The notes: a model not told the origin generated them from the sequence alone. A DNA stretch of 63,970 nt, filler included, from Octopus bimaculoides (GCF_001194135.2; 5 parts of 4 records of this genome joined end to end with filler, not necessarily neighbours in it), one strand, 5' to 3'; counted from the first letter of the whole stretch, positions 1 to 50,954 are shown. Program-made: numbers and translations.

Positions 1-120
1 ACCCAGTTTTGACAGAAATTATTCGCCAGGAGCTGCACAAAGCCGGATTTCATGGGAAGGCTGCAATCAGAAAAGCACTACTTTCAAAAACAAACGTTGG
101 AAAGCGTTTAGAGTGGGGAA
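1..120 (+). mobile_element. Tc1-family transposase fragment
   Basis: Translation IIRQELHKAGFHGKAAIRKALLSKTNVGKRLEW matches the Tc1 pattern 'IRRRLHEAGLHGRxAxKKPLLSxxNxxxRLEW'; similarity is lost after about 120. Confidence 0.75.
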
Positions 121-682
121 TAAATGATTTTTCCCGCACGAGGTTTTTTCACGCTAGCTACTTGATAAATTCTTGTAAAAATTTTATCCTATTATTGAAT
201 TAATTAAATATATAACCGGAACATATTCAGTGCTGAATTTTATTCTGGAAAAAAAAAAACACATGTACCGAGATGCAATTCAATAAAAGCCCGCCTCTTA
301 CATAGATATATAGGGATAAACAATCTTCTATGTACTATGCTGGATACAAGAGGTGTTTGTTTGTTTGGTATGTTGAATTTTTGTTTATTTTTATGTATTT
401 TGACCATACTGTACTGATGAGCAGAGGTTACATATTCCTGTAATAACTGCGAAATCGACGATATATAGTTTAGTCTGTTTTTAAGAGGCCGGCTTTGAGA
501 ATTGCATTTCCTCGCGTTCAGTAAAAATGTGTTTATTATGGTAGTTTGACCTTAGAGTCCCTCATAGCGGGAAAGCTCATTTTTAATACTGACAGGGATG
601 ATAACAGCCCCACAGCGAAGCTAGATCAGTATACTTGACTAGTTTCGAATTTTTATACAGGCTGAGGGATAATTCTTTTCTA

Positions 683-850
683 CTTTTCTACTCGAGGCAC
701 AAGGCCCGAAACTTTTTGGGAGGAGGGGGCCAGTCGATTAGATCGACCCCAATACGCAACTGGTACTTAATTTATCGACCCCGAAAGGATGAAAAGCAAA
801 GCATTTCGCCTGGCGTGCCAACATTTCTGCCAGCATGCAGCCTTAGGCTG
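683..850 (-). mobile_element. tRNA-derived SINE family B (Deu/Nin-like central domain), internally deleted copy
   Basis: Contains the reverse complement of 'ctttgc(c)tttcatcctttcggggtcgataaattaagtaccag', shared with about 10 copies in the window. Confidence 0.8.
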
Positions 851-1603
851 CTGGATAATTGCGTAATTGCGATATCGGTGATGTCACAAGTATTAATTTA
901 CTCGGAGCATAAGCTCATTCAAACAATGTCTAACCCTCAACACACTAGATTAACCCACCGGTAACAAGACATTTTTTTATTTCATTCTTCTATCTGATAA
1001 GGAAGATTTTGCCCGAAATATTAAGAGATCATTAAACAATTTAGGCAGGTTAATATATTTTCTTCTCGTTATTTTCATTTATTGACATAAACTTAATATT
1101 TTACTATATATGTGTTAGATAGATAGATAGATAGATAAGAGAGAGAGGGGTAATCGAGAGAAAGAGAAAAAAGGGAAGTAGAAATTTCCTTATACAATCA
1201 TTGCTGCCACTTCGTATCTCTTCAAGCCAATGATGGAGTTTTTACGAAGTCACTCGACTTGCTGGATATAGTAGTCAAATAGCCCTTAAATAACATTTGG
1301 ATGTCTTAAATAGAGAAAACATTAGCCAAGGTAATCCTAAATATATCTCTTTTACCATATCACAAATCTTGCTCCTTGAAGTTAACCTGAGGTTAAACAA
1401 CAACACTAGCAACAACTACAAACCAACAGCCAAAGCAACATTCACCACCTACTGTCACCAAAACAACACGACCTCACATTATTATTGTCATCACCATCAT
1501 TATTTCACATCACATCCACCACCACCCTGCCAACAACTGCACGACCACTAACGCGAAAACCAGTATTGCCAGCAACAACAACAACAACAACGTCGCCACT
1601 TAC

Positions 1604-1709
1604 TTCACGATATGTGCTATGAGAAAATCAAAGATACTTTGGTTAGGTTCCGGTAGTCCTCTCAGTAACATCTGTATAACTTTCGCCTGCCTCTCTGTGG
1701 TCTTTATAT
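1604..1709 (-). CDS. RhoGAP-domain gene (BCR/ABR-like), exon d, 106 nt
   Basis: Acceptor ttgatttacag|AT, donor AA|gtaagt; reads DIKTTERQAKVIQMLLRGLPEPNQSIFDFLIAHIV, fitting the RhoGAP 'LLxxLPxxNxxxLxFLxxHL' helix; phase-compatible with exon 3352-3486. Confidence 0.9.
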
Positions 1710-1766
1710 CTGTAAATCAATTTAAAATATATCAGTAAAAATATATATCACCTGGGGCACATTTTT

Positions 1767-2185
1767 AGGCGCAAGAGTAGCTGTGTGGTAAGTAGCTTGC
1801 TTACCAACCACATGGTTCTGGGTTCATTTCCACTGCGTGGCACCTTGGGCAAGTGTCTTCTACTATAGCCTCAGGCCGACCAAAGCCTTGTGAGTGGATT
1901 TGGTAGACGGAAACTGAAAGAAGCCTGTCGTATATATGTATATATATATGTGTATGTATGTGAGTGTATATGCCTGTGTGTCTGTGTTTCTCCCCCCAAC
2001 ATCACTTGACAACCGATGCTGGTGTGTTTACGTCCCCGTAACCTAGCGGTTCGGCAAAAGAGACCGATAGAATAAGTACTAGGCTTACAAAGAATAAGTC
2101 CTGGGGTCGATTTGCTCGACTAAAGGCGGTACTCCAGCATGGCCACAGTCAAATGACTGAAACAAGTAAAATAGAGTAAAGAGAG
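1767..2185 (+). mobile_element. tRNA-derived SINE family A (CORE-like 'ccttgggcaagtg' domain, internal TA/TG microsatellite), full length
   Basis: A-box-like tagctgtgtggtaag, B-box-like gggttcatttcc, tail aaacaagtaaaa(gagtaaa)n; near-identical copies at 10382, 15942, 17148, 40372 and 45543. Confidence 0.85.
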
Positions 2186-2257
2186 TATCAATAAAAAAAA
2201 ACATCAATCATTGCACTTACAAAGATGCAGGCCAAACTGCACCAATGATTCATACAC

Positions 2258-2318
2258 AATATTGGTTTCAAATTTTGGCACAAGGCCAGCAATTTTGGAG
2301 GAGGGTATAAGTCGATTA
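2258..2318 (-). mobile_element. SINE family B 3' end, truncated by a gap
   Basis: ggtttcaaattttggcacaaggccagcaattttgg is the reverse complement of the tail at 45060-45097. Confidence 0.65.
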
Positions 2319-3351
2319 NNNNNNNNNNNNNNNNNNNNNNNNNNNNNNNNNNNNNNNNNNNNNNNNNNNNNNNNNNNNNNNNNNNNNNNNNNNNNNNNNN
2401 NNNNNNNNNNNNNNNNNNNNNNNNNNNNNNNNNNNNNNNNNNNNNNNNNNNNNNNNNNNNNNNNNNNNNNNNNNNNNNNNNNNNNNNNNNNNNNNNNNNN
2501 NNNNNNNNNNNNNNNNNNNNNNNNNNNNNNNNNNNNNNNNNNNNNNNNNNNNNNNNNNNNNNNNNNNNNNNNNNNNNNNNNNNNNNNNNNNNNNNNNNNN
2601 NNNNNNNNNNNNNNNNNNNNNNNNNNNNNNNNNNNNNNNNNNNNNNNNNNNNNNNNNNNNNNNNNNNNNNNNNNNNNNNNNNNNNNNNNNNNNNNNNNNN
2701 NNNNNNNNNNNNNNNNNNNNNNNNNNNNNNNNNNNNNNNNNNNNNNNNNNNNNNNNNNNNNNNNNNNNNNNNNNNNNNNNNNNNNNNNNNNNNNNNNNNN
2801 NNNNNNNNNNNNNNNNNNNNNNNNNNNNNNNNNNNNNNNNNNNNNNNNNNNNNNNNNNNNNNNNNNNNNNNNNNNNNNNNNNNNNNNNNNNNNNNNNNNN
2901 NNNNNNNNNNNNNNNNNNNNNNNNNNNNNNNNNNNNNNNNNNNNNNNNNNNNNNNNNNNNNNNNNNNNNNNNNNNNNNNNNNNNNNNNNNNNNNNNNNNN
3001 NNNNNNNNNNNNNNNNNNNNNNNNNNNNNNNNNNNNNNNNNNNNNNNNNNNNNNNNNNNNNNNNNNNNNNNNNNNNNNNNNNNNNNNNNNNNNNNNNNNN
3101 NNNNNNNNNNNNNNNNNNNNNNNNNNNNNNNNNNNNNNNNNNNNNNNNNNNNNNNNNNNNNNNNNNNNNNNNNNNNNNNNNNNNNNNNNNNNNNNNNNNN
3201 NNNNNNNNNNNNNNNNNNNNNAGGAGGCAGGGGAGGAGGAGGAGGAGGCAGGGGAGGAGAAGGACGCAGGGGGAGGGGCAGCAGCAGTAGCAGCAAAAAA
3301 ATTTGAAGGATTGGAGGTGGCGTAAATACAGAAGTCAGTAAAGTAACTTAC

Positions 3352-3486
3352 CATCAGAGCTTACATAAAATTTCGAATTGTCTAGAAGCGGGTGTGGTAG
3401 ACTCAAGAGGAAATTCATAAGCAGATTGGTTATATCATGTACAGAATATTTTCTGTCCTTGATGGAAAGCGCCCCAGTAAAACTGC
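3352..3486 (-). CDS. RhoGAP-domain gene (BCR/ABR-like), exon c, 135 nt
   Basis: Acceptor tttttctatctgtattcaatcag|GC, donor G|gtaagt; reads (C)SFTGALSIKDRKYSVHDITNLLMNFLLSLPHPLLDNSKFYVSSD, matching RhoGAP 'DVHxVAxLLKxFLRxLPEPLL'. Confidence 0.9.
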
Positions 3487-3648
3487 CTGATTGAATACAG
3501 ATAGAAAAACACATAAAAATGGCCATACCATGCCCACTTACCATTTAGAGAGAAAAAAAAAAGAAAACACTCGATTAAGGCATCTCAAATATCTCCATCT
3601 ACCCCTATATCTCCACCTCCTAAGATCTGCTACTCCTTCTTCCTCTAA

Positions 3649-4085
3649 TTTCTTTATTGCCCACAAGGGGCTAAACATAGAGGGGACAAACAAGGACAGA
3701 CAAGGGATTAAGTCGATTAGATCGAGCCCAGTGCGTAACTGGTACTTAATTTATCGGCCCCGAAAGGATAAAAGGCAAAGTCGAACTTGGCGGAATTTGA
3801 ACTCAGAACATAACGGCAGACGAAATACGACTAAGCATTTCGCCCGGCATGCTAACGTTTCTTATTTCTTTATTGCCCGCAAGGGGCTAAACATAGAGGG
3901 GACAAACAAGGATAGACAAAGGGATTAAGTCGATTACATCGACCCCAGTGCGTAACTGGTACTTAATCTATCGACCCCGAAAGGATGAAAGGCAAAATCG
4001 ACCTCGGCGGAATTTGAGCTCAGAACATAAAAACGGAAGAAATGCCGGTAAACATTTTTTCCAGCTTGCTAACGATTCTGCCAGA
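3649..4085 (-). mobile_element. Two head-to-tail SINE family B copies (3649-3860, 3861-4085) in a RhoGAP intron
   Basis: Repeated ttctttattgccc(a/g)caaggggctaaacatagaggggacaaacaagga...gtactta...cgaaaggat...ctaacg. Confidence 0.85.
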
Positions 4086-4150
4086 GTATTTTCAATTTAA
4101 AGAGGCGTCAAACGTCTTAATCGACCACTAGTTGATCAAATGGTACTTAC

Positions 4151-4228
4151 AGAGATCAAATACTCCCATTAGTTCTTCCACATGACTCTCGTTGCCAGGA
4201 ATTAAGTAGATATTTTCAACATCCAAAC
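4151..4228 (-). CDS. RhoGAP-domain gene (BCR/ABR-like), exon b, 78 nt, arginine-finger exon with Arg replaced by Leu
   Basis: Acceptor tttcgtttcttcttaaaacaaccgcaag|GT, donor T|gtaagt; reads (G)LDVENIYLIPGNESHVEELMGVFDL versus consensus GLxxEGIYRxSG; TTA (Leu) at 4203-4205. Confidence 0.9.
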
Positions 4229-4917
4229 CTTGCGGTTGTTTTAAGAAGAAACGAAAGAAAAAGTAGAGCAATTTAAATATAAACCTCCTATTGTAAAACA
4301 GTGTAAGATGCAGGACTAGAAGACAGTGGACATTATTCGTGGGTGAATGCTTCGTAACGGAGTTTGTAGTGGTGGTATACGTTGTAACGATAGTTATAGT
4401 AGTGGTGATCTTATGGTAGTGTTGGTGGTGTTGGTGTTGTTGTTGGTGATGGTGGTGATAGCAGCGGCAGAAACGGTGTTTTTTGAAGTGGTGGTGTTGA
4501 TGTGTAAAGACATTGGCAAGAGAAAATGATCAACCTTACGCTTAATATCATTTTGCACAGTCACAAGTACGTCATGAGGACAAATATAGGACATTGTTGT
4601 TATGCTACAGAGTGATGTGATATGGGGATATGTGACGTAATGCGGTGTGATATTTTTGCTCTATACCAGATCAATCCTTCGATAGAAAACTTGTTAAGGT
4701 TATCTCTACAGATTTTTCTATAGAGATTATAGCCAGCACTGATTTAGTTACACCATTTCATATCCAAAACACCTGATGTAAACAACAATGAGATCGAAGA
4801 TCAAAAATGGATAATGGGTGTATATGACATATTTCAGGAGATTTTGCTCCTTCGTCAGAGGCACATCAGACCCATTAATCATCCACTAAGTAACGCAGTA
4901 TAGAAGAAGATAGAGAA

Positions 4918-5424
4918 GGCACTCCATCGCTTACGACGTCGAGTGCTCCAGTTGATCCGATCAACGGAACAGCCTGCTCGTGAAATCAACGTGCAAGTGG
5001 CTGAGCACTCCACAGACACGTGTACCCTTAAGGTAGTTCTCGGGGAGATTCAGCGTGACACAGTGTGACAAGGCTGACCCTTTGAATTACAGGCACAACA
5101 GAAACAGGAAGTAAGAGTGAGAGAAAGTTGTGGTGAAAGAGTACAGCAGGGTTCGCTACCATCCCCTGNNNNNNNNNNTCAGCGTGACACAGTGTGACAA
5201 GGCTGACCCTTTGAATTACAGGCACAACAGAAACAGGAAGTAAGAGTGAGAGAAAGTTGTGGTGAAAGAGTACAGCAGGGTTCGCTACCATCCCCTGCCG
5301 GAGCCTCGTGGAGCTTTAGGTTTTTTCGCTCAATAAACACTCACAACGCCCGGTCTGGGAATCGAAACTGGGATCCTATGACCGCGAGTCCGCTGCCCTA
5401 ACCACTGAGCCATTGCGCCTCCAC
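4918..5424 (-). mobile_element. tRNA-Arg-like-headed SINE family C
   Basis: Minus strand begins gtggaggcgcaatggctcagtggttagggcagcggacTCGcggtcatagg...gtttcgattccc (A and B boxes, TCG in the anticodon position); a second 3' copy is at 5581-5775. Confidence 0.8.
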
Positions 5425-5580
5425 ATCGCAGTGTAATGTTATTGGATACCAGACTTACATATTAAACACATTCCTGGAAGCTGGTACATAAACATTAATG
5501 ACAGGTAAGGACATGCTATTTCGTTATGCAACCATAATATGCTACAAAGTATATTAAACGTTTTTATAATATACTTTGTA

Positions 5581-5775
5581 GTCATCGTGGCTCCGTCGGT
5601 TGCGACGACGAGGGTTCCAGTTGATCTGATCAACGGAACAGCCTGCTCGTGAAATTAACGTGCAAGTGGCTGAGTACTCCACAAACACGTGTACCCTTAA
5701 CGTAGTTCTCGGGGAGACTCAGCGTGGCACATAGTGTAACAGGACTGGCTCTTTAGAATACAGGTACAACAGAGA
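5581..5775 (-). mobile_element. SINE family C, 3' portion
   Basis: High identity to 4918-5110 (gatcaacggaacagcctgctcgtgaaat...gtgtacccttaa). Confidence 0.8.
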
Positions 5776-5814
5776 CATATTATTAGCATTATCCAATGAG
5801 TCCTTTTAGATGAG

Positions 5815-6330
5815 AAACGGACGTGATATGAAACGTGAGGATAATGTGACGTGATATGACGTTATATCGAGAACTTCACTGTGGGGAGATATGATGCTGC
5901 GTATAAAGTGATGTGATATCGATTGCTGTGATATGGTGAGATATAATTTAGTGTAGTGTCAAGTGATATAGCTTTATGTTGTGAGATACGATTCGGTATT
6001 TATTATGTGATATGATATCAAGAACTGATATGTTAAGATGTGTTGTGCTGTGTAAAAGAAATGTGATATCGCGTATTTTAATGTGATTGGATGTGATGTG
6101 GTGCAATATCCTGTGACAACCAGTGGTGTGAGGAAATTAGATGTGATGTGAGGAGAGTGGCATGTGATAATAATTACTATAAAATGATGTTACATAATAT
6201 GGCCCAATATTGTGTAATATCGAGTTCTGTCATGCGATGAGATACGACGAGATGTAATGTGAACTGATATCGTGTGTTCTGATGTGATATGATACTGCAT
6301 GCTCCGATGTAGTGACTTACGAGGTGGGAA
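5815..6330. repeat. Degenerate (GTGAT/ATGAT)n simple-repeat tract
   Basis: Dense recurring gtgat/tgata/atgtg units; similar tracts at 4610-4655 and 7365-7430. Confidence 0.65.
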
Positions 6331-6581
6331 TAATTTGATATCGAAGGTGTGTGGCCTAGGGATTAGGGTGCTGCACTGACAATGGAGCAGAGCTTTGTGT
6401 TCTTGAACGAAACCCTTCATGTGACATCGCATCAGTCAATTCATTTATGAATGAGTACTCTTGCGATAGATCTTGTATTCCGTTCAGGGGTAATGTTGTT
6501 ATTACGGTCACTCACACGCCATGGAGACCGAGAAGCCGGCCCCCATGACTCAAGTGAGCAGTGTCCAGGGGTTGAAGATAA

Positions 6582-6583
6582 TA

Positions 6584-6644
<61 letters not shown>

Positions 6645-6765
6645 CGACGACGACGACGACGGTGATGATGATGATCATGATGATCATGATGATCATGATG
6701 AAGATAATGAAGGGGATGAAGAAGATGATGACGTCGACGACGACGACAACGATGATATAATGTGA
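6582..6765. repeat. (GAT)n/(GAC)n microsatellite
   Basis: Directly visible. Confidence 0.95.
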
Positions 6766-7061
6766 TATNNNNNNNNNNNNNNNNNNNNNNNNNNNNNNNN
6801 NNNNNNNNNNNNNNNNNNNNNNNNNNNNNNNNNNNNNNNNNNNNNNNNNNNNNNNNNNNNNNNNNNNNNNNNNNNNNNNNNNNNNNNNNNNNNNNNNNNN
6901 NNNNNNNNNNNNNNNNNNNNNNNNNNNNNNNNNNNNNNNNNNNNNNNNNNNNNNNNNNNNNNNNNNNNNNNNNNNNGTAAACTTGAACAGATTCTGGAAG
7001 TGTTATAAGGTAATGGGGCAAAGAACCTCTTTCTCAAGTCTACAACACTTATGTGTCCTAC

Positions 7062-7123
7062 CTCTTTCTTCTATAAACTTAACACAACTTTCGAGAATTA
7101 GAGGAACGTCTCTCTTTTCACGT
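7062..7123 (-). CDS. RhoGAP-domain gene (BCR/ABR-like), exon a, 62 nt
   Basis: Acceptor tccttgatatttgcag|A, donor G|gtagga; reads REKRDVPLILESCVKFIEER(G), aligning with BCR/ABR-type RERSKVPYIVRQCVEEIERRG (recalled sequence). Confidence 0.85.
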
Positions 7124-7429
7124 CTGCAAATATCAAGGATATTAGGATAAGTATAGAGGTACTACGAAGATTATGCATGGATACATACATACATGCATAC
7201 ATATATATGTATACACAAACACACACACACATGTATATACATACATACATACATACATACATACATACATNNNNNNNNNNGTGATATGATATTGAATGTT
7301 TTTTTGTTTTTTTTCGTCGAGTAACATGAGAATCTCGAATGCTATAATGAGGTAAAAACGTGCTGCACTCTAATGTCATGTGATATCGGGTGATATGAAA
7401 TGGTGAGGTGTGATGCAGGATGAAGTGAT

Positions 7430-7610
7430 GTAAACTTGAACAGATTCTGGAAGTGTTATAAGGTAATGGGGCAAAGAACCTCTTTCTCAAGTCTACAACA
7501 CTTATGTGTCCTACCTCTTTCTTCTATAAACTTAACACAACTTTCGAGAATTAGAGGAACGTCTCTCTTTTCACGTCTGCAAATATCAAGGATATTAGGA
7601 TAAGTATAGA
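7430..7610 (-). other. Identical duplicate of 6977-7157, including RhoGAP exon a (7515-7576); probable assembly redundancy
   Basis: Exact copy at offset 453, with both copies abutting N gaps; the flanking CATA microsatellite is also repeated. Confidence 0.75.
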
Positions 7611-7808
7611 NNNNNNNNNNNNNNNNNNNNNNNNNNNNNNNNNNNNNNNNNNNNNNNNNNNNNNNNNNNNNNNNNNNNNNNNNNNNNNNNNNNNNNNNNN
7701 NNNNNNNNNNNNNNNNNNNNNNCATACATACATGCATACATATATATGTATACACAAACACACACACACATGTATATACATACATACATACATACATACA
7801 TACATACA

Positions 7809-7844
<36 letters not shown>

Positions 7845-7997
7845 TATAAATTTATTTCCCAAACGCATGGATAATTTATCCTGATCACGCTATTTATTAG
7901 CATTATCACGCGTTTGGGAAATAATTTTATTTCTGTATCTTACAATACATCTCAACGCTTCTGAAAAAGAACAAACTTTGTTTACTTTCATCGTAAA

Positions 7998-49774: not shown

Positions 49775-50176
49775 CTATTTGAGCGAGAAATTGCGAATGA
49801 AAAGAGTTGCAGCAAAATTTGTGCGTCGCTTGTTCACAGAAGATCAAAAGCAGTCACGACTGAATGCGTGTCGTGAACTGAAAGAATAGTTGAAAGTTGA
49901 TCCGGACCTTTTTTCGAAGGTCGTCACTGGTGATGAAAGCTGGTACTACAGAATTTGCAAATGTGGAAGACATGAAGAAAAAAGAAACGATGGAGGCGTT
50001 AAAAGGCATCAATTCACAAGAGTTCCAGCACTGCTTCCAACCGTGGAAAACGCGGCTGGATCAATGCTTTGCTTCAAATGGAGAATACTTTGAAGGTGAT
50101 AAAAGTGTAAACATGTAAAATTAAGTGAATAAAATAGTATTGCAAAATTCCGATTTCTTTCGGGTACCCCCTCGTA
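49775..50176 (+). mobile_element. Mariner (irritans-like), internally deleted 3' part with TIR
   Basis: LRMKRVAAKFVRRLFTEDQKQSR...VVTGDESWYY joined directly to FQHCFQPWKTRLDQCFASNGEYFEGD; ends gtaccccctcg|ta. Confidence 0.9.
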
Positions 50177-50954
50177 TAGGTAGGCACAGTTTTTTCGTTT
50201 AGAGATAGTTGCACTTTCATTTATATAATATTTCGGTACGTGGCTTCGATTAGAAAATTTATTTTTAAAGGGTGGACAACGCGGTGGTGGGAGGGACACC
50301 AACTCCCGAAACTGCAAGGAATGAAGAACGTTTGCTACGCAGCTAAAGTCCTATAATTAATGTAGTGCGAAAAGAAAAACTTTTTTTTTTTTACTCTTTT
50401 AACAGCAAATGGTTCTCGAAGTTCAAACATTTTAGAAAGATTTTGAAGCAGAAACACAAGACACCCCCCACCTCTAAATTATTGAATGATCTTCAGCATC
50501 TCATTGATTCATTCAGTTCAATAATTACAATACTAGGGAAGAAGCTTAATGAAAATTATTCAATGCAGCATTGTTTAGGCCGGAAGCCATATCGTAGTTA
50601 TCAATTTGAGAAGGAAATCTCAGAAAGTAAATTTCCTAAGCCAGATAAAATGGGCATAATGCATAAGAGAAAAACAAGGTTGATCTGAGCTAAACGACAA
50701 TACGTTTTAGTTGATATACAGTGACTAGGAGGAGGGTGCATTGATGTTTAACTCCAAGTCAGCTCTAGTCGAGGAGATGGCCTCTTACATCAACCATCTT
50801 TCTGAAGCATTGAATTAGAAGTAGCTCATGTCTCACGCCACCTCTGTAAAGGAATGGAATAGACAGCGTAAGAGAGAGCAAGATTGTTGTTTTCAGACAA
50901 ACGAGAATATCGTCAAGTCTGCGTTCATTGTTGTCTAACAATATTTTCTCCTCA

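What the first reader, a model, noticed from the sequence alone, without database searches (positions are those of the whole stretch)
1604..7123. BCR/ABR-like RhoGAP that has lost its arginine finger (candidate pseudo-GAP)
Seen: four exons (62+78+135+106 = 381 nt) with canonical GT-AG sites and matching phases give REKRDVPLILESCVKFIEERGLDVENIYLIPGNESHVEELMGVFDLCSFTGALSIKDRKYSVHDITNLLMNFLLSLPHPLLDNSKFYVSSDDIKTTERQAKVIQMLLRGLPEPNQSIFDFLIAHIV with no stops. The catalytic Arg of G-I-[YF]-R-x-x-G is Leu (TTA, 4203-4205), and the conserved Lys and Arg of L-K-x-[FY]-x-R-x-L-P are Met (3416-3418) and Leu. Known: these residues are needed for GTP-hydrolysis stimulation and GTPase binding. A-to-I editing, pervasive in coleoids, cannot restore Arg (TTA becomes TTG, still Leu). 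From memory, human BCR exons 19, 20 and 21 are 140, 135 and 106 nt, matching 62+78, 135 and 106 here. Inference: an intact, probably expressed but catalytically dead paralog that may act as a scaffold or effector.
Basis: partly seen in the sequence, partly recalled or inferred. Interest (0 to 1): 0.8.

Follow-up and report, generated by a model that had tools for sequence, protein, structure and literature searches.

The report
Octopus ABR-like gene with dead GAP domain
These four exons belong to a real, already annotated Octopus bimaculoides gene copied from the ABR/BCR Rho-regulator family, whose GTPase-activating domain lost its catalytic arginine long ago; it is one of three neighbouring copies like this, so it adds a member to the known class of 'pseudo-GAPs' rather than a new kind of system.

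Summary
The three assembly gaps lie in introns. The gapless O. vulgaris orthologue has the same exons and no alternative Arg-bearing exon.

The gene is Octopus bimaculoides A0A0L8GCV6 / XP_014782265.1, annotated 'breakpoint cluster region protein-like'. ABR/BCR ancestry holds:
- A C2 domain precedes the GAP domain.
- The rebuilt O. vulgaris orthologue has a DH domain.
- Exon lengths and phases match canonical Argonauta ABR (110,62,78,141,106) and sperm-whale BCR (110,140,135,106).

The finger Arg is Leu (TTA) in O. bimaculoides, O. vulgaris and O. sinensis, Asn in the Argonauta orthologue, and Ile in two tandem paralogues within 200 kb. Argonauta also keeps a canonical Arg-bearing ABR 285 kb away.

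The ORF is maintained: no indels against 13.7 expected, and overall dN/dS is 0.52. This gene's GAP domain evolves nearly neutrally (0.84), whereas a paralogue's does not (0.40).

Expression and loss of activity were not tested. This is a new member of a known kind, of moderate interest.

The parts
7062..7123 (-). Exon A (62 nt): start of the RhoGAP domain, REKRDVPLILESCVKFIEER(G). It corresponds to P0001 residues 272-292.
   Evidence: The acceptor is cag| and the donor is |gtagga. Argonauta canonical ABR and paralogue psi3 have a 62-nt exon at the same position and phase.
4151..4228 (-). Exon B (78 nt): (G)LDVENIYLIPGNESHVEELMGVFDL(C). It carries the finger loop.
   Evidence: The boundaries are caag|GTTTGG ... 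GATCTCT|gtaagt. It aligns to GIYRVSGNKS of p190A.
4203..4205 (-). Codon TTA = Leu300 at the arginine-finger position (Arg282 in p50RhoGAP numbering).
   Evidence: O. vulgaris has the same TTA codon.
3352..3486 (-). Exon C (135 nt): SFTGALSIKDRKYSVHDITNLLMNFLLSLPHPLLDNSKFYVSSD.
   Evidence: Sperm-whale BCR has a 135-nt exon here, and Argonauta ABR a 141-nt one.
3416..3418 (-). Codon ATG = Met341 at the conserved Lys position (Lys319 of p50RhoGAP).
   Evidence: The position is Val in O. sinensis/vulgaris and Lys in the Argonauta orthologue.
3404..3406 (-). Codon TTG = Leu345 at the second basic position (Arg323 of p50RhoGAP).
   Evidence: This position is Ser in the active GAP p190A, so on its own it is not diagnostic.
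1604..1709 (-). Exon D (106 nt): DIKTTERQAKVIQMLLRGLPEPNQSIFDFLIAHIV(K).
   Evidence: Argonauta ABR, psi3 and sperm-whale BCR all have a 106-nt exon here. The last coding exon (220 nt) lies outside the piece, at L002 38811-39030.
7430..7610 (-). Second, 100% identical copy of exon A plus flanks (exon copy at 7515-7576). This is an assembly artefact.
   Evidence: One search shows 6977-7157 = 7430-7610 and 7184-7270 = 7723-7809, each abutting N runs. One search shows the two contigs map to overlapping O. vulgaris intervals 49909-50207 and 50028-50355. O. vulgaris has a single exon A.
4229..7061 (-). Intron A-B. It contains the gaps 5169-5178 and 6769-6976, interspersed repeats and a (GAT/GAC)n tract.
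   Evidence: The gapless orthologous intron holds no further coding exon.
1710..3351 (-). Intron C-D. It contains the gap 2319-3221 and a repeat copy (about 1759-2187).
   Evidence: The orthologous O. vulgaris intron is 531 nt with no extra exon.

Best explanation
The four exons are the middle of the RhoGAP domain of a real, conserved Octopus bimaculoides gene, which I call psi1 here. The gene arose by duplication of the octopod ABR gene and keeps the ABR layout of DH (RhoGEF), PH, C2 and RhoGAP.

What has changed in the GAP domain:
- The catalytic arginine finger is replaced by Leu.
- The paired Lys is replaced by Met.
- The FGP motif reads LGY.

The domain therefore most likely keeps the RhoGAP fold but cannot stimulate GTP hydrolysis. 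That makes it a pseudo-GAP.

The loss is old:
- Three tandem paralogues (psi1, psi2, psi3) lie within 200 kb, and all lack the Arg.
- The Argonauta orthologue lacks it too.
- A canonical Arg-bearing ABR is kept alongside in Argonauta.

Inferred mode of action: the protein works through its membrane-binding C2, its DH-PH module and its C-terminal tail. It would act as a GEF-only or scaffolding derivative of ABR, with the dead GAP domain serving as a structural or binding module.

Shown versus inferred. Shown: gene structure, ancestry, residue losses, conservation and ORF maintenance. Inferred: catalytic death, expression and the scaffold or GEF-only role.
For: Identity of the gene.
- The peptide is 100% identical to residues 272-397 of P0001 = UniProt A0A0L8GCV6. 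That protein clusters with XP_014782265.1 and XP_052824455.1, 'breakpoint cluster region protein'.
- The window maps to CM046606.1.

Domains.
- P0001 matches RhoGAP at 1.2e-27 and C2 weakly.
- The rebuilt 827-aa O. vulgaris orthologue matches RhoGEF at 1.3e-09, 38.9 bits against a cutoff of 27.6, and RhoGAP at 2.2e-28.

Ancestry.
- P0001 aligns to Patella ABR over C2 plus GAP, E=4e-38.
- Exon lengths: psi1 146,62,78,135,106,220. Argonauta canonical ABR 110,62,78,141,106,229. psi3 110,62,78,135,106,184. Sperm-whale BCR 110,140,135,106,163. Phases are the same throughout.

Residues at the finger position.
- L in O. bimaculoides, O. sinensis and O. vulgaris psi1; N in Argonauta psi1; I in psi2 and psi3.
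- R in all five canonical ABR/BCR sequences aligned.
- R in at least 90% of the 48 aligned sequences.
- The literature treats RhoGAP-domain proteins without the finger as catalytically inactive, and names Arg282/Lys319 as the functional pair (PMC8305018).

Canonical copy retained. Argonauta P0044 has GIYRVSG, LKLYFRELPEPL and NKMTNGNLAVIFG. It lies on the same contig, 285 kb from the psi1 orthologue.

Maintenance of the ORF.
- O. bimaculoides against O. vulgaris over 438 codons gives dN/dS 0.52, bootstrap interval 0.35-0.80.
- There are no indels where the intron indel rate predicts 13.7 (P=1e-6). P(no stop) is 0.009.
- The Argonauta exons are intact and keep their splice sites.
- The psi3 GAP domain has dN/dS 0.40, interval 0.18-0.83.

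Fold. The AlphaFold model has C2 and GAP cores at pLDDT 85-93. Foldseek matches solved RhoGAP domains at TM 0.80-0.85.
Against: - This gene's own GAP domain has dN/dS 0.84 (interval 0.47-1.8). Its dN of 0.098 equals the intron divergence of 0.094. Constraint on the residues of this particular domain is therefore weak or mixed.
- No transcript evidence was obtained. The protein's cluster holds only genome-derived models.
- The AlphaFold alignment was dominated by canonical ABR/BCR sequences, which biases the model towards the canonical fold.
- A canonical Arg-bearing ABR was not retrieved from O. bimaculoides itself. That search also failed to return its own 1483-aa source protein, so it is not informative.
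- The DH domain scores far below the canonical ones (38.9 bits against 78-116). GEF competence is therefore uncertain.
Confidence: 0.8

Rival explanations
1. Decaying pseudogene: a duplicated ABR copy that is no longer used and merely has not yet acquired stop codons.
For: - The GAP-domain dN/dS of 0.84 has an interval that includes 1, and dN is about equal to the intron divergence.
- No transcript-derived sequence is in the protein's cluster.
- Gene models are fragmented or inconsistent in three species.
Against: - Whole-CDS dN/dS is 0.52, with an interval that excludes 1.
- Over 1314 nt there are no indels against 13.7 expected (P about 1e-6). P(no stop) is 0.009. Even for the GAP domain alone, P(no indel) is 0.004.
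- All splice sites are canonical in O. bimaculoides, O. vulgaris and Argonauta, and the Argonauta orthologue has an intact ORF at about 45-60% identity.
- A full 827-aa ORF can be rebuilt in O. vulgaris.
Confidence: 0.08
2. Still an active GAP that uses a non-canonical mechanism. Another residue, or the GTPase itself, would supply the catalytic function, as RapGAP uses an Asn thumb and RanGAP needs no finger.
For: - The predicted fold is intact.
- psi2 has an Arg two residues downstream (FIYIMRG), and Argonauta psi1 has Asn at the finger position.
- Some substitutions on the binding surface also occur in active GAPs: Ser for Arg323 in p190A, and Ser for Asn391 in ARHGAP12/15.
Against: - The finger residue differs among orthologues and paralogues (L, N, I). 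This argues against a conserved substitute catalytic residue.
- The paired Lys is also lost in all Octopus copies (M, V, T, L), and FGP reads LGY, LAI or LCA.
- Human RhoGAP-domain proteins without the finger are reported inactive (PMC8305018).
Confidence: 0.07
3. Artefact: the missing Arg results from a sequencing or assembly error, or the real Arg-encoding exon is hidden in an assembly gap.
For: - The piece has several N gaps and clear mis-assembly around exon A.
- The newest RefSeq model is visibly corrupted by that mis-assembly.
Against: - The same TTA codon and the same four exons are present in the gapless O. vulgaris assembly and in the O. sinensis protein model.
- The only exon-A-like and exon-B-like sequences in the orthologous introns are the ones used. 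The single motif hit sits in a frame full of stops.
- Argonauta and two paralogues also lack the Arg.
Confidence: 0.02

Closest known systems
ABR / BCR (DH-PH-C2-RhoGAP regulators of Rac/Cdc42); closest sequenced canonical relative is Argonauta hians ABR GAB1608419.1
   Same: - C2 lies directly upstream of a C-terminal RhoGAP domain, with DH-PH further upstream.
- Intron positions and phases through the GAP domain are identical: 62+78 (=140), 135/141 and 106 nt.
- In Argonauta the orthologue of this gene is genomically linked to the canonical ABR.
   Different: - The finger Arg is Leu, the paired Lys is Met, the second Arg is Leu, and FGP is LGY.
- There is no long N-terminal region: 827 aa against about 1500.
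- The DH and C2 domains are much more diverged.
- Identity to molluscan ABR is only 28%.
- The gene occurs as three tandem copies.
Human RhoGAP-domain pseudo-GAPs without an arginine finger (ARHGAP36, DEPDC1A/B, OCRL1, INPP5B, FAM13B, CNTD1; p85alpha/beta lacking binding determinants)
   Same: They have a RhoGAP fold in which the catalytic Arg is replaced. They are reported catalytically inactive and are used for binding or scaffolding (PMC8305018). About 7% of the 150 best RhoGAP representatives here also lack the Arg.
   Different: - None of them derives from the BCR/ABR lineage.
- The octopod genes keep a DH domain, so a GEF half may remain next to the dead GAP half.
- The octopod family is lineage-restricted and tandemly arrayed.
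ARHGAP12/15 and p190RhoGAP (ARHGAP35/5) GAP domains, the best solved-structure matches
   Same: They give the highest sequence and fold similarity among PDB entries: E=4e-22 to 4e-17 and TM 0.79-0.84. They also share Ser at the Asn391 position (ARHGAP12/15) or a non-Arg residue at the Arg323 position (p190A).
   Different: They are active GAPs with GIYRVSG and the paired Lys. Their domain context and exon structure are different. No BCR/ABR GAP domain appeared among the PDB matches, which is why these rank first.

Membership tests
RhoGAP domain superfamily (Pfam PF00620) | Significant match to the RhoGAP profile | tested here: met
   The 126-aa peptide scores E=1.9e-22, 80.2 bits against a cutoff of 24.5. 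Full protein P0001 scores 1.2e-27.
RhoGAP domain superfamily (Pfam PF00620) | All-helical RhoGAP fold | tested here: met
   The AlphaFold model has its GAP core at pLDDT 85-91. Foldseek gives TM 0.80-0.85 to 3fk2, 3iug, 1tx4 and 5irc. Caveat: the alignment used for the model was dominated by canonical ABR/BCR sequences.
Catalytically competent RhoGAP | Arginine finger (Arg282 of p50RhoGAP) in G-[ILV]-[YF]-R-x-S-G | tested here: not met
   The motif reads N-I-Y-L-I-P-G, with Leu encoded by TTA. 139 of the 150 best representatives have Arg here.
Catalytically competent RhoGAP | Paired Lys (Lys319 of p50RhoGAP) in L-K-x-[FY] | tested here: not met
   The position is Met341; 138 of 150 representatives have Lys. 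The functional pair Arg282/Lys319 is named in PMC8305018.
Catalytically competent RhoGAP | Stimulation of GTP hydrolysis on a Rho-family GTPase | not testable with these tools
   This needs a biochemical assay.
BCR/ABR family | C2 domain immediately N-terminal to a C-terminal RhoGAP domain | tested here: met
   - BLAST alignment to Patella ABR spans C2 plus GAP (392 aa, E=4e-38), whereas other RhoGAPs align over GAP only.
- Pfam C2 is weak (0.0023, below cutoff).
- The model shows a beta-sandwich at residues 111-234 with pLDDT 80-93, and Foldseek hits the PKC-epsilon C2 domain at TM 0.74.
BCR/ABR family | DH (RhoGEF)-PH module upstream | tested here: met
   The orthologue rebuilt from O. vulgaris locus L001 matches RhoGEF at 1.3e-09, 38.9 bits against a cutoff of 27.6, with weak PH hits. 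In O. bimaculoides the upstream exons lie outside the window and are annotated as a separate model, so the feature is shown for the orthologue and not for this assembly.
BCR/ABR family | Family-specific intron positions and phases in the GAP domain | tested here: met
   The exons are 62+78, 135 and 106 nt with phases 1,1,1,2. This matches Argonauta ABR (62,78,141,106) and sperm-whale BCR (140,135,106).
BCR/ABR family | Groups with ABR/BCR in a phylogeny of GAP domains | tested here: inconclusive
   In the NJ tree the pseudo-GAP clade (100% support) sits inside ABR/BCR, next to Argonauta ABR. That placement has only 25% support, and the branch is long.
BCR/ABR family | Active Rac/Cdc42 GAP with GIYRVSG, LKLYFRELPEPL and NLAxxFGPTL | tested here: not met
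   All three motifs are altered: NIYLIPG, LLMNFLLSLPHPL and SICLTLGYVF. The gene is therefore filed as a derived paralogue, not as a functional ABR/BCR orthologue.

The most novel reading that the evidence does not exclude
Octopods carry an old, tandemly arrayed subfamily of at least three ABR-derived genes. In these the GAP half of a dual GEF/GAP regulator has been permanently disabled, while DH-PH-C2 is retained. A self-limiting Rac/Cdc42 regulator would thereby become a GEF-only activator or a GTP-Rho-binding effector. The relaxed or diversifying GAP-like surface in psi1 would then reflect recruitment to a new binding partner in a lineage known for neural and cytoskeletal innovation.
Probability: 0.3. 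Interest if true: 0.5.

Novelty: new member of a known kind. Interest (0 to 1): 0.35.

Why it matters
RhoGAP-fold pseudo-GAPs are an accepted class, but none is known to descend from BCR/ABR, the only family that joins a RhoGEF and a RhoGAP in one chain. A natural series of ABR copies with the GAP half disabled would show what the GAP domain does besides catalysis. The series comprises three paralogues and orthologues in at least four octopod species, next to a canonical copy in Argonauta. It would also show how a dual regulator can be turned into a one-way one.

There are practical consequences for annotation:
- The genes are currently labelled 'breakpoint cluster region protein', which implies an activity they probably lack.
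- The newest O. bimaculoides model carries an artefactual 21-residue duplication.
- The O. sinensis, O. vulgaris and Argonauta models are mis-spliced or truncated.

Tried and rejected
1. The search for homologous proteins with the 126-aa peptide found nothing. The exhaustive representative search was needed to find the annotated protein.

2. The last word-indexed search, using the Patella ABR C-terminus, was meant to retrieve a canonical O. bimaculoides ABR. It returned 90 proteins and no cephalopod. It also missed its own 1483-aa source protein, so the absence is not informative. The canonical octopod ABR came instead from the representative list.

3. Exact-protein look-ups for P0164, P0001 and P0002 were not on record. 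P0165, P0151, P0007, P0153, P0155, P0044, P0006 and P0179 worked.

4. No next RhoGAP exon lies in window 1-1603. It lies outside the piece.

5. The neighbouring C2-containing gene in L001 (69044-76157, minus strand) was considered as a possible paralogue or canonical ABR. No ABR-like tblastn hit was found there, so it was rejected.

6. My first splice-refinement routine failed on most junctions and was replaced.

7. A first hybrid of the O. vulgaris and O. sinensis models went out of frame after the 186-nt DH exon, which suggested a decayed DH. This was rejected after finding an AG acceptor 23 nt upstream (L001 19118). That acceptor gives a 105-nt exon and an intact 827-aa ORF.

8. Rfam and tRNA scans of the piece found nothing.

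9. A p190/ARHGAP12-type origin, suggested by the PDB ranking, was rejected because of the C2 domain and the exon structure.

Full report
1. THE OBSERVATION

Exons. The piece was read in full. From the flanks printed, and independently from spliced mapping of the annotated protein, the exons are:
- A: 7062-7123 (62 nt)
- B: 4151-4228 (78 nt)
- C: 3352-3486 (135 nt)
- D: 1604-1709 (106 nt)
Each has an AG acceptor and a GT donor. The phases are 1, 1 and 1, then 2 into the next exon.

Domain match. The joined 381 nt have no stop in the coding frame. The peptide matches Pfam RhoGAP at E=1.9e-22, profile positions 1-118 of 148.

Key residues. Against p190A the finger motif GIYRVSGNKS aligns with NIYLIPGNES.
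- Leu is TTA at 4203-4205.
- The Met replacing the conserved Lys is at 3416-3418.
- A-to-I editing of TTA gives TTG, which is still Leu.

Gaps. All three gaps inside the finding lie in introns, and none abuts an exon. Whether the sequence is continuous across them was tested with the orthologous O. vulgaris locus L001, which has no N at all. It carries the same 62/78/135/106 exons. Between the flanking exons, the only sequences resembling exon A or exon B are the ones used. The one motif-like match sits in a frame full of stops. An Arg-bearing alternative exon hidden in a gap is therefore not supported.

2. WHAT THE GENE IS

Identity. An exhaustive profile search found a 471-aa protein that is 100% identical to the peptide over residues 272-397. 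It is Octopus bimaculoides A0A0L8GCV6. It clusters with RefSeq XP_014782265.1 and XP_052824455.1, named 'breakpoint cluster region protein(-like)'. The window maps to chromosome CM046606.1 of GCA_001194135.2. The last coding exon lies just outside the piece.

Domains. The protein has a C2 domain directly upstream of the GAP domain:
- Pfam C2 is weak.
- BLAST alignment to Patella ABR covers C2 plus GAP over 392 aa, E=4e-38. Other RhoGAP families align over the GAP domain only.
- The AlphaFold model shows a confident beta-sandwich followed by the helical GAP domain. Foldseek gives TM 0.80-0.85 to solved RhoGAP domains and 0.74 to a PKC C2 domain.

Exon structure. This is the strongest evidence of ancestry.
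- This gene: ...146, 62, 78, 135, 106, 220
- O. vulgaris orthologue: identical
- Paralogue psi3: ...110, 62, 78, 135, 106, 184
- Canonical Argonauta hians ABR: ...110, 62, 78, 141, 106, 229
- Sperm-whale BCR: ...110, 140, 135, 106, 163, 87
All have the same phases. The 62+78 split is shared by the canonical octopod ABR.

Upstream DH domain. The O. sinensis and O. vulgaris gene models disagree in the DH region. Using an AG acceptor 23 nt upstream of the one in the O. sinensis model gives a 105-nt exon and an intact 23-exon, 827-aa ORF in O. vulgaris. That ORF has a Pfam-significant RhoGEF domain (1.3e-09, 38.9 bits against a cutoff of 27.6), weak PH and C2 hits, and RhoGAP at 2.2e-28. The gene therefore keeps the ABR layout DH-PH-C2-RhoGAP.

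3. HOW OLD AND HOW WIDESPREAD THE LOSS IS

Orthologues.
- O. sinensis (84% identical) reads NIYLTNG. O. vulgaris has the same TTA codon.
- In Argonauta hians only the last 152 residues are annotated (GAB1608410.1). The upstream exons are present and intact in locus L005: 62, 78, 138 and 106 nt, all AG/GT. They encode ENTYNVDGD, that is Asn at the finger position.

Paralogues. Two further O. bimaculoides paralogues have Ile at the finger position: psi2 = XP_014790547/8 reads FIYIMRG, and psi3 = XP_014782258 reads SLYISKG. They lie within 200 kb of this gene on the same chromosome.

Phylogeny. A neighbour-joining tree puts all pseudo-GAP copies in one clade with 100% support. Argonauta psi1 groups with Octopus psi1 at 76%. 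This suggests the duplications predate the Argonauta-Octopus split. Placement of the clade next to Argonauta ABR has only 25% support.

Canonical copy. Argonauta keeps a canonical ABR of 1515 aa, with GIYRVSG, LKLYFRELPEPL and NKMTNGNLAVIFG. It lies 285 kb from the psi1 orthologue on the same contig. I could not retrieve the canonical copy from O. bimaculoides. The only remaining search was uninformative.

4. IS THE DOMAIN DEAD, AND IS THE GENE ALIVE?

Residue losses.
- In an alignment of this protein and its O. sinensis orthologue with 46 ABR/BCR proteins, at least 90% of sequences have R, K and R at the three basic positions, plus N and FGP. This protein has L, M, L, S and LGY.
- Among the 150 best RhoGAP representatives, 139 have Arg at the finger and 138 have the Lys.
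- A review states that RhoGAP-domain proteins lacking the finger are catalytically inactive (ARHGAP36, CNTD1, DEP1/2, FAM13B, INPP5B, OCRL1). It names Arg282/Lys319 as the functional pair (PMC8305018).

A caution. The second Arg is Ser in the active GAP p190A, and the Asn is Ser in the active GAPs ARHGAP12/15. Those two changes alone are not diagnostic.

Selection, O. bimaculoides against O. vulgaris.
- 438 codons: dS 0.14, dN 0.073, dN/dS 0.52 (bootstrap interval 0.35-0.80).
- C2 region: 0.34.
- GAP domain: 0.84 (interval 0.47-1.8).

Neutral benchmark. Syntenic intron sequence has K=0.094 and 0.0104 gap openings per nt.
- Neutrality predicts 13.7 indels in the CDS (P of none = 1e-6) and 5.4 in the GAP domain (P=0.004).
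- P(no stop) is 0.009 for the CDS.

Reading. The reading frame is clearly maintained. The amino-acid sequence of this gene's GAP domain, however, changes at about the neutral rate. In paralogue psi3 the GAP domain is constrained: 0.40 (interval 0.18-0.83).

My conclusion is a maintained gene with a catalytically dead GAP-fold domain. In psi1 that domain is under relaxed or mixed selection. Transcription and activity were not tested.

5. MECHANISM

Shown:
- An ABR-derived DH-PH-C2-GAP gene
- Finger Arg and paired Lys lost
- Fold predicted to be retained
- ORF maintained
- Family old and tandemly arrayed, alongside a canonical copy in Argonauta

Inferred:
- The GAP-like domain no longer accelerates hydrolysis.
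- The protein acts through C2, DH-PH and a conserved C-terminal tail (S-x-H-S-x-x-S-x-x-S-F in Octopus and Argonauta), as a GEF-only or scaffolding derivative.

Rivals. A decaying pseudogene, a non-canonical active GAP and an assembly artefact are each given low weight, for the reasons listed in their entries.

6. COMPARISON AND NOVELTY

The closest family is ABR/BCR, by ancestry. The closest functional class is the RhoGAP pseudo-GAPs. Two full-text searches found no paper on octopus BCR-like genes or cephalopod RhoGAP expansions.

The gene itself is already annotated. What is new is:
- its pseudo-GAP status
- the three-gene family
- the age of the loss

I rate it a new member of a known kind, with interest 0.35.

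7. ASSEMBLY AND ANNOTATION SIDE FINDINGS

Exon A with its flanks occurs twice at 100% identity (6977-7157 = 7430-7610), and 7184-7270 = 7723-7809. All of these abut N runs. The two contigs map to overlapping O. vulgaris intervals, and O. vulgaris has one exon A. They are therefore overlapping contigs placed in the wrong order.

RefSeq XP_052824455.1 consequently contains the exon-A peptide twice, joined by RTHK read from intron sequence.

Noticed in passing
window 6977-7157 and 7430-7610; also 7184-7270 = 7723-7809: These are 100% identical blocks that abut N runs. They come from two overlapping contigs scaffolded in the wrong order, which duplicates exon A. RefSeq XP_052824455.1 (P0151) therefore contains REKRDVPLILESCVKFIEERG twice, joined by 'RTHK' read from intron sequence.
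   Followed up: yes
window 5050-5168 = 5179-5297: A 119-nt block is repeated exactly on both sides of the 10-N gap. It looks like another uncollapsed contig overlap inside intron A-B.
   Followed up: partly
window 3-173 (+): A fragment of a Tc1/mariner-type transposase: Pfam HTH_Tnp_Tc3_2, E=3.2e-07, 31.0 bits, just under the 31.5 cutoff. It lies in the intron downstream of exon D.
   Followed up: partly
window 683-801, 3644-3862, 3860-4079; 1759-2187; 4918-5425 and 5591-5777: Interspersed repeats. A roughly 220-nt element occurs in tandem at 3644-4079, with a partial copy at 683-801. Two other elements each recur several times elsewhere in the 49-kb locus L002 at 82-96% identity. There was no tRNA or Rfam match.
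   Followed up: partly
window 6580-6760; 7184-7270 and 7723-7850; 3222-3300: Long (GAT)n/(GAC)n, (CATA)n and purine-rich (GGAGGA/GCAGCA)n microsatellites lie next to assembly gaps. They are a likely cause of the assembly breaks.
   Followed up: no
L001 17565-19222 (O. vulgaris orthologue): The O. sinensis model XP (P0164) reads the 186-nt DH exon out of frame, and the O. vulgaris model (P0165) skips exons. Using the AG acceptor at L001 19118 (a 105-nt exon) gives an intact 827-aa DH-PH-C2-GAP ORF.
   Followed up: yes
L005 2378-6476 (Argonauta hians): The Argonauta orthologue is annotated only as a 152-aa fragment (GAB1608410.1). Intact C2 exons and exons A and B lie unannotated upstream.
   Followed up: yes
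L002 1-3093; L004 1-7334; L008 1-2240 (O. bimaculoides): Upstream of each of the three paralogues there is a separate gene model on the same strand that runs off the locus. The one upstream of psi2 carries a RhoGEF hit. These are probably the DH-PH halves split off by assembly gaps.
   Followed up: partly
protein P0005 (Venturia canescens, XP_043288185.1): A parasitoid-wasp protein has three tandem RhoGAP domains (Pfam 1.2e-77), all without the finger Arg (LLYMKDG, FLYKQDG, ILYERDG). It is an unrelated pseudo-GAP case that ranked among the best matches to the octopus peptide.
   Followed up: no
protein P0003 (1771 aa, source not looked up): This gene model has about ten near-identical RhoGAP-like repeats reading STEGIFLVTAS, with Leu at the finger position. 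It is either a tandem array or a collapsed or expanded assembly.
   Followed up: no
C-terminus of psi1 proteins (outside the window; L002 38811-39030, L005 11298-11529): A tail motif, S-x-H-S-x-x-S-x-x-S-F, is conserved between Octopus and Argonauta psi1. It is unlike the canonical ABR/BCR tail, and its function is unknown.
   Followed up: no
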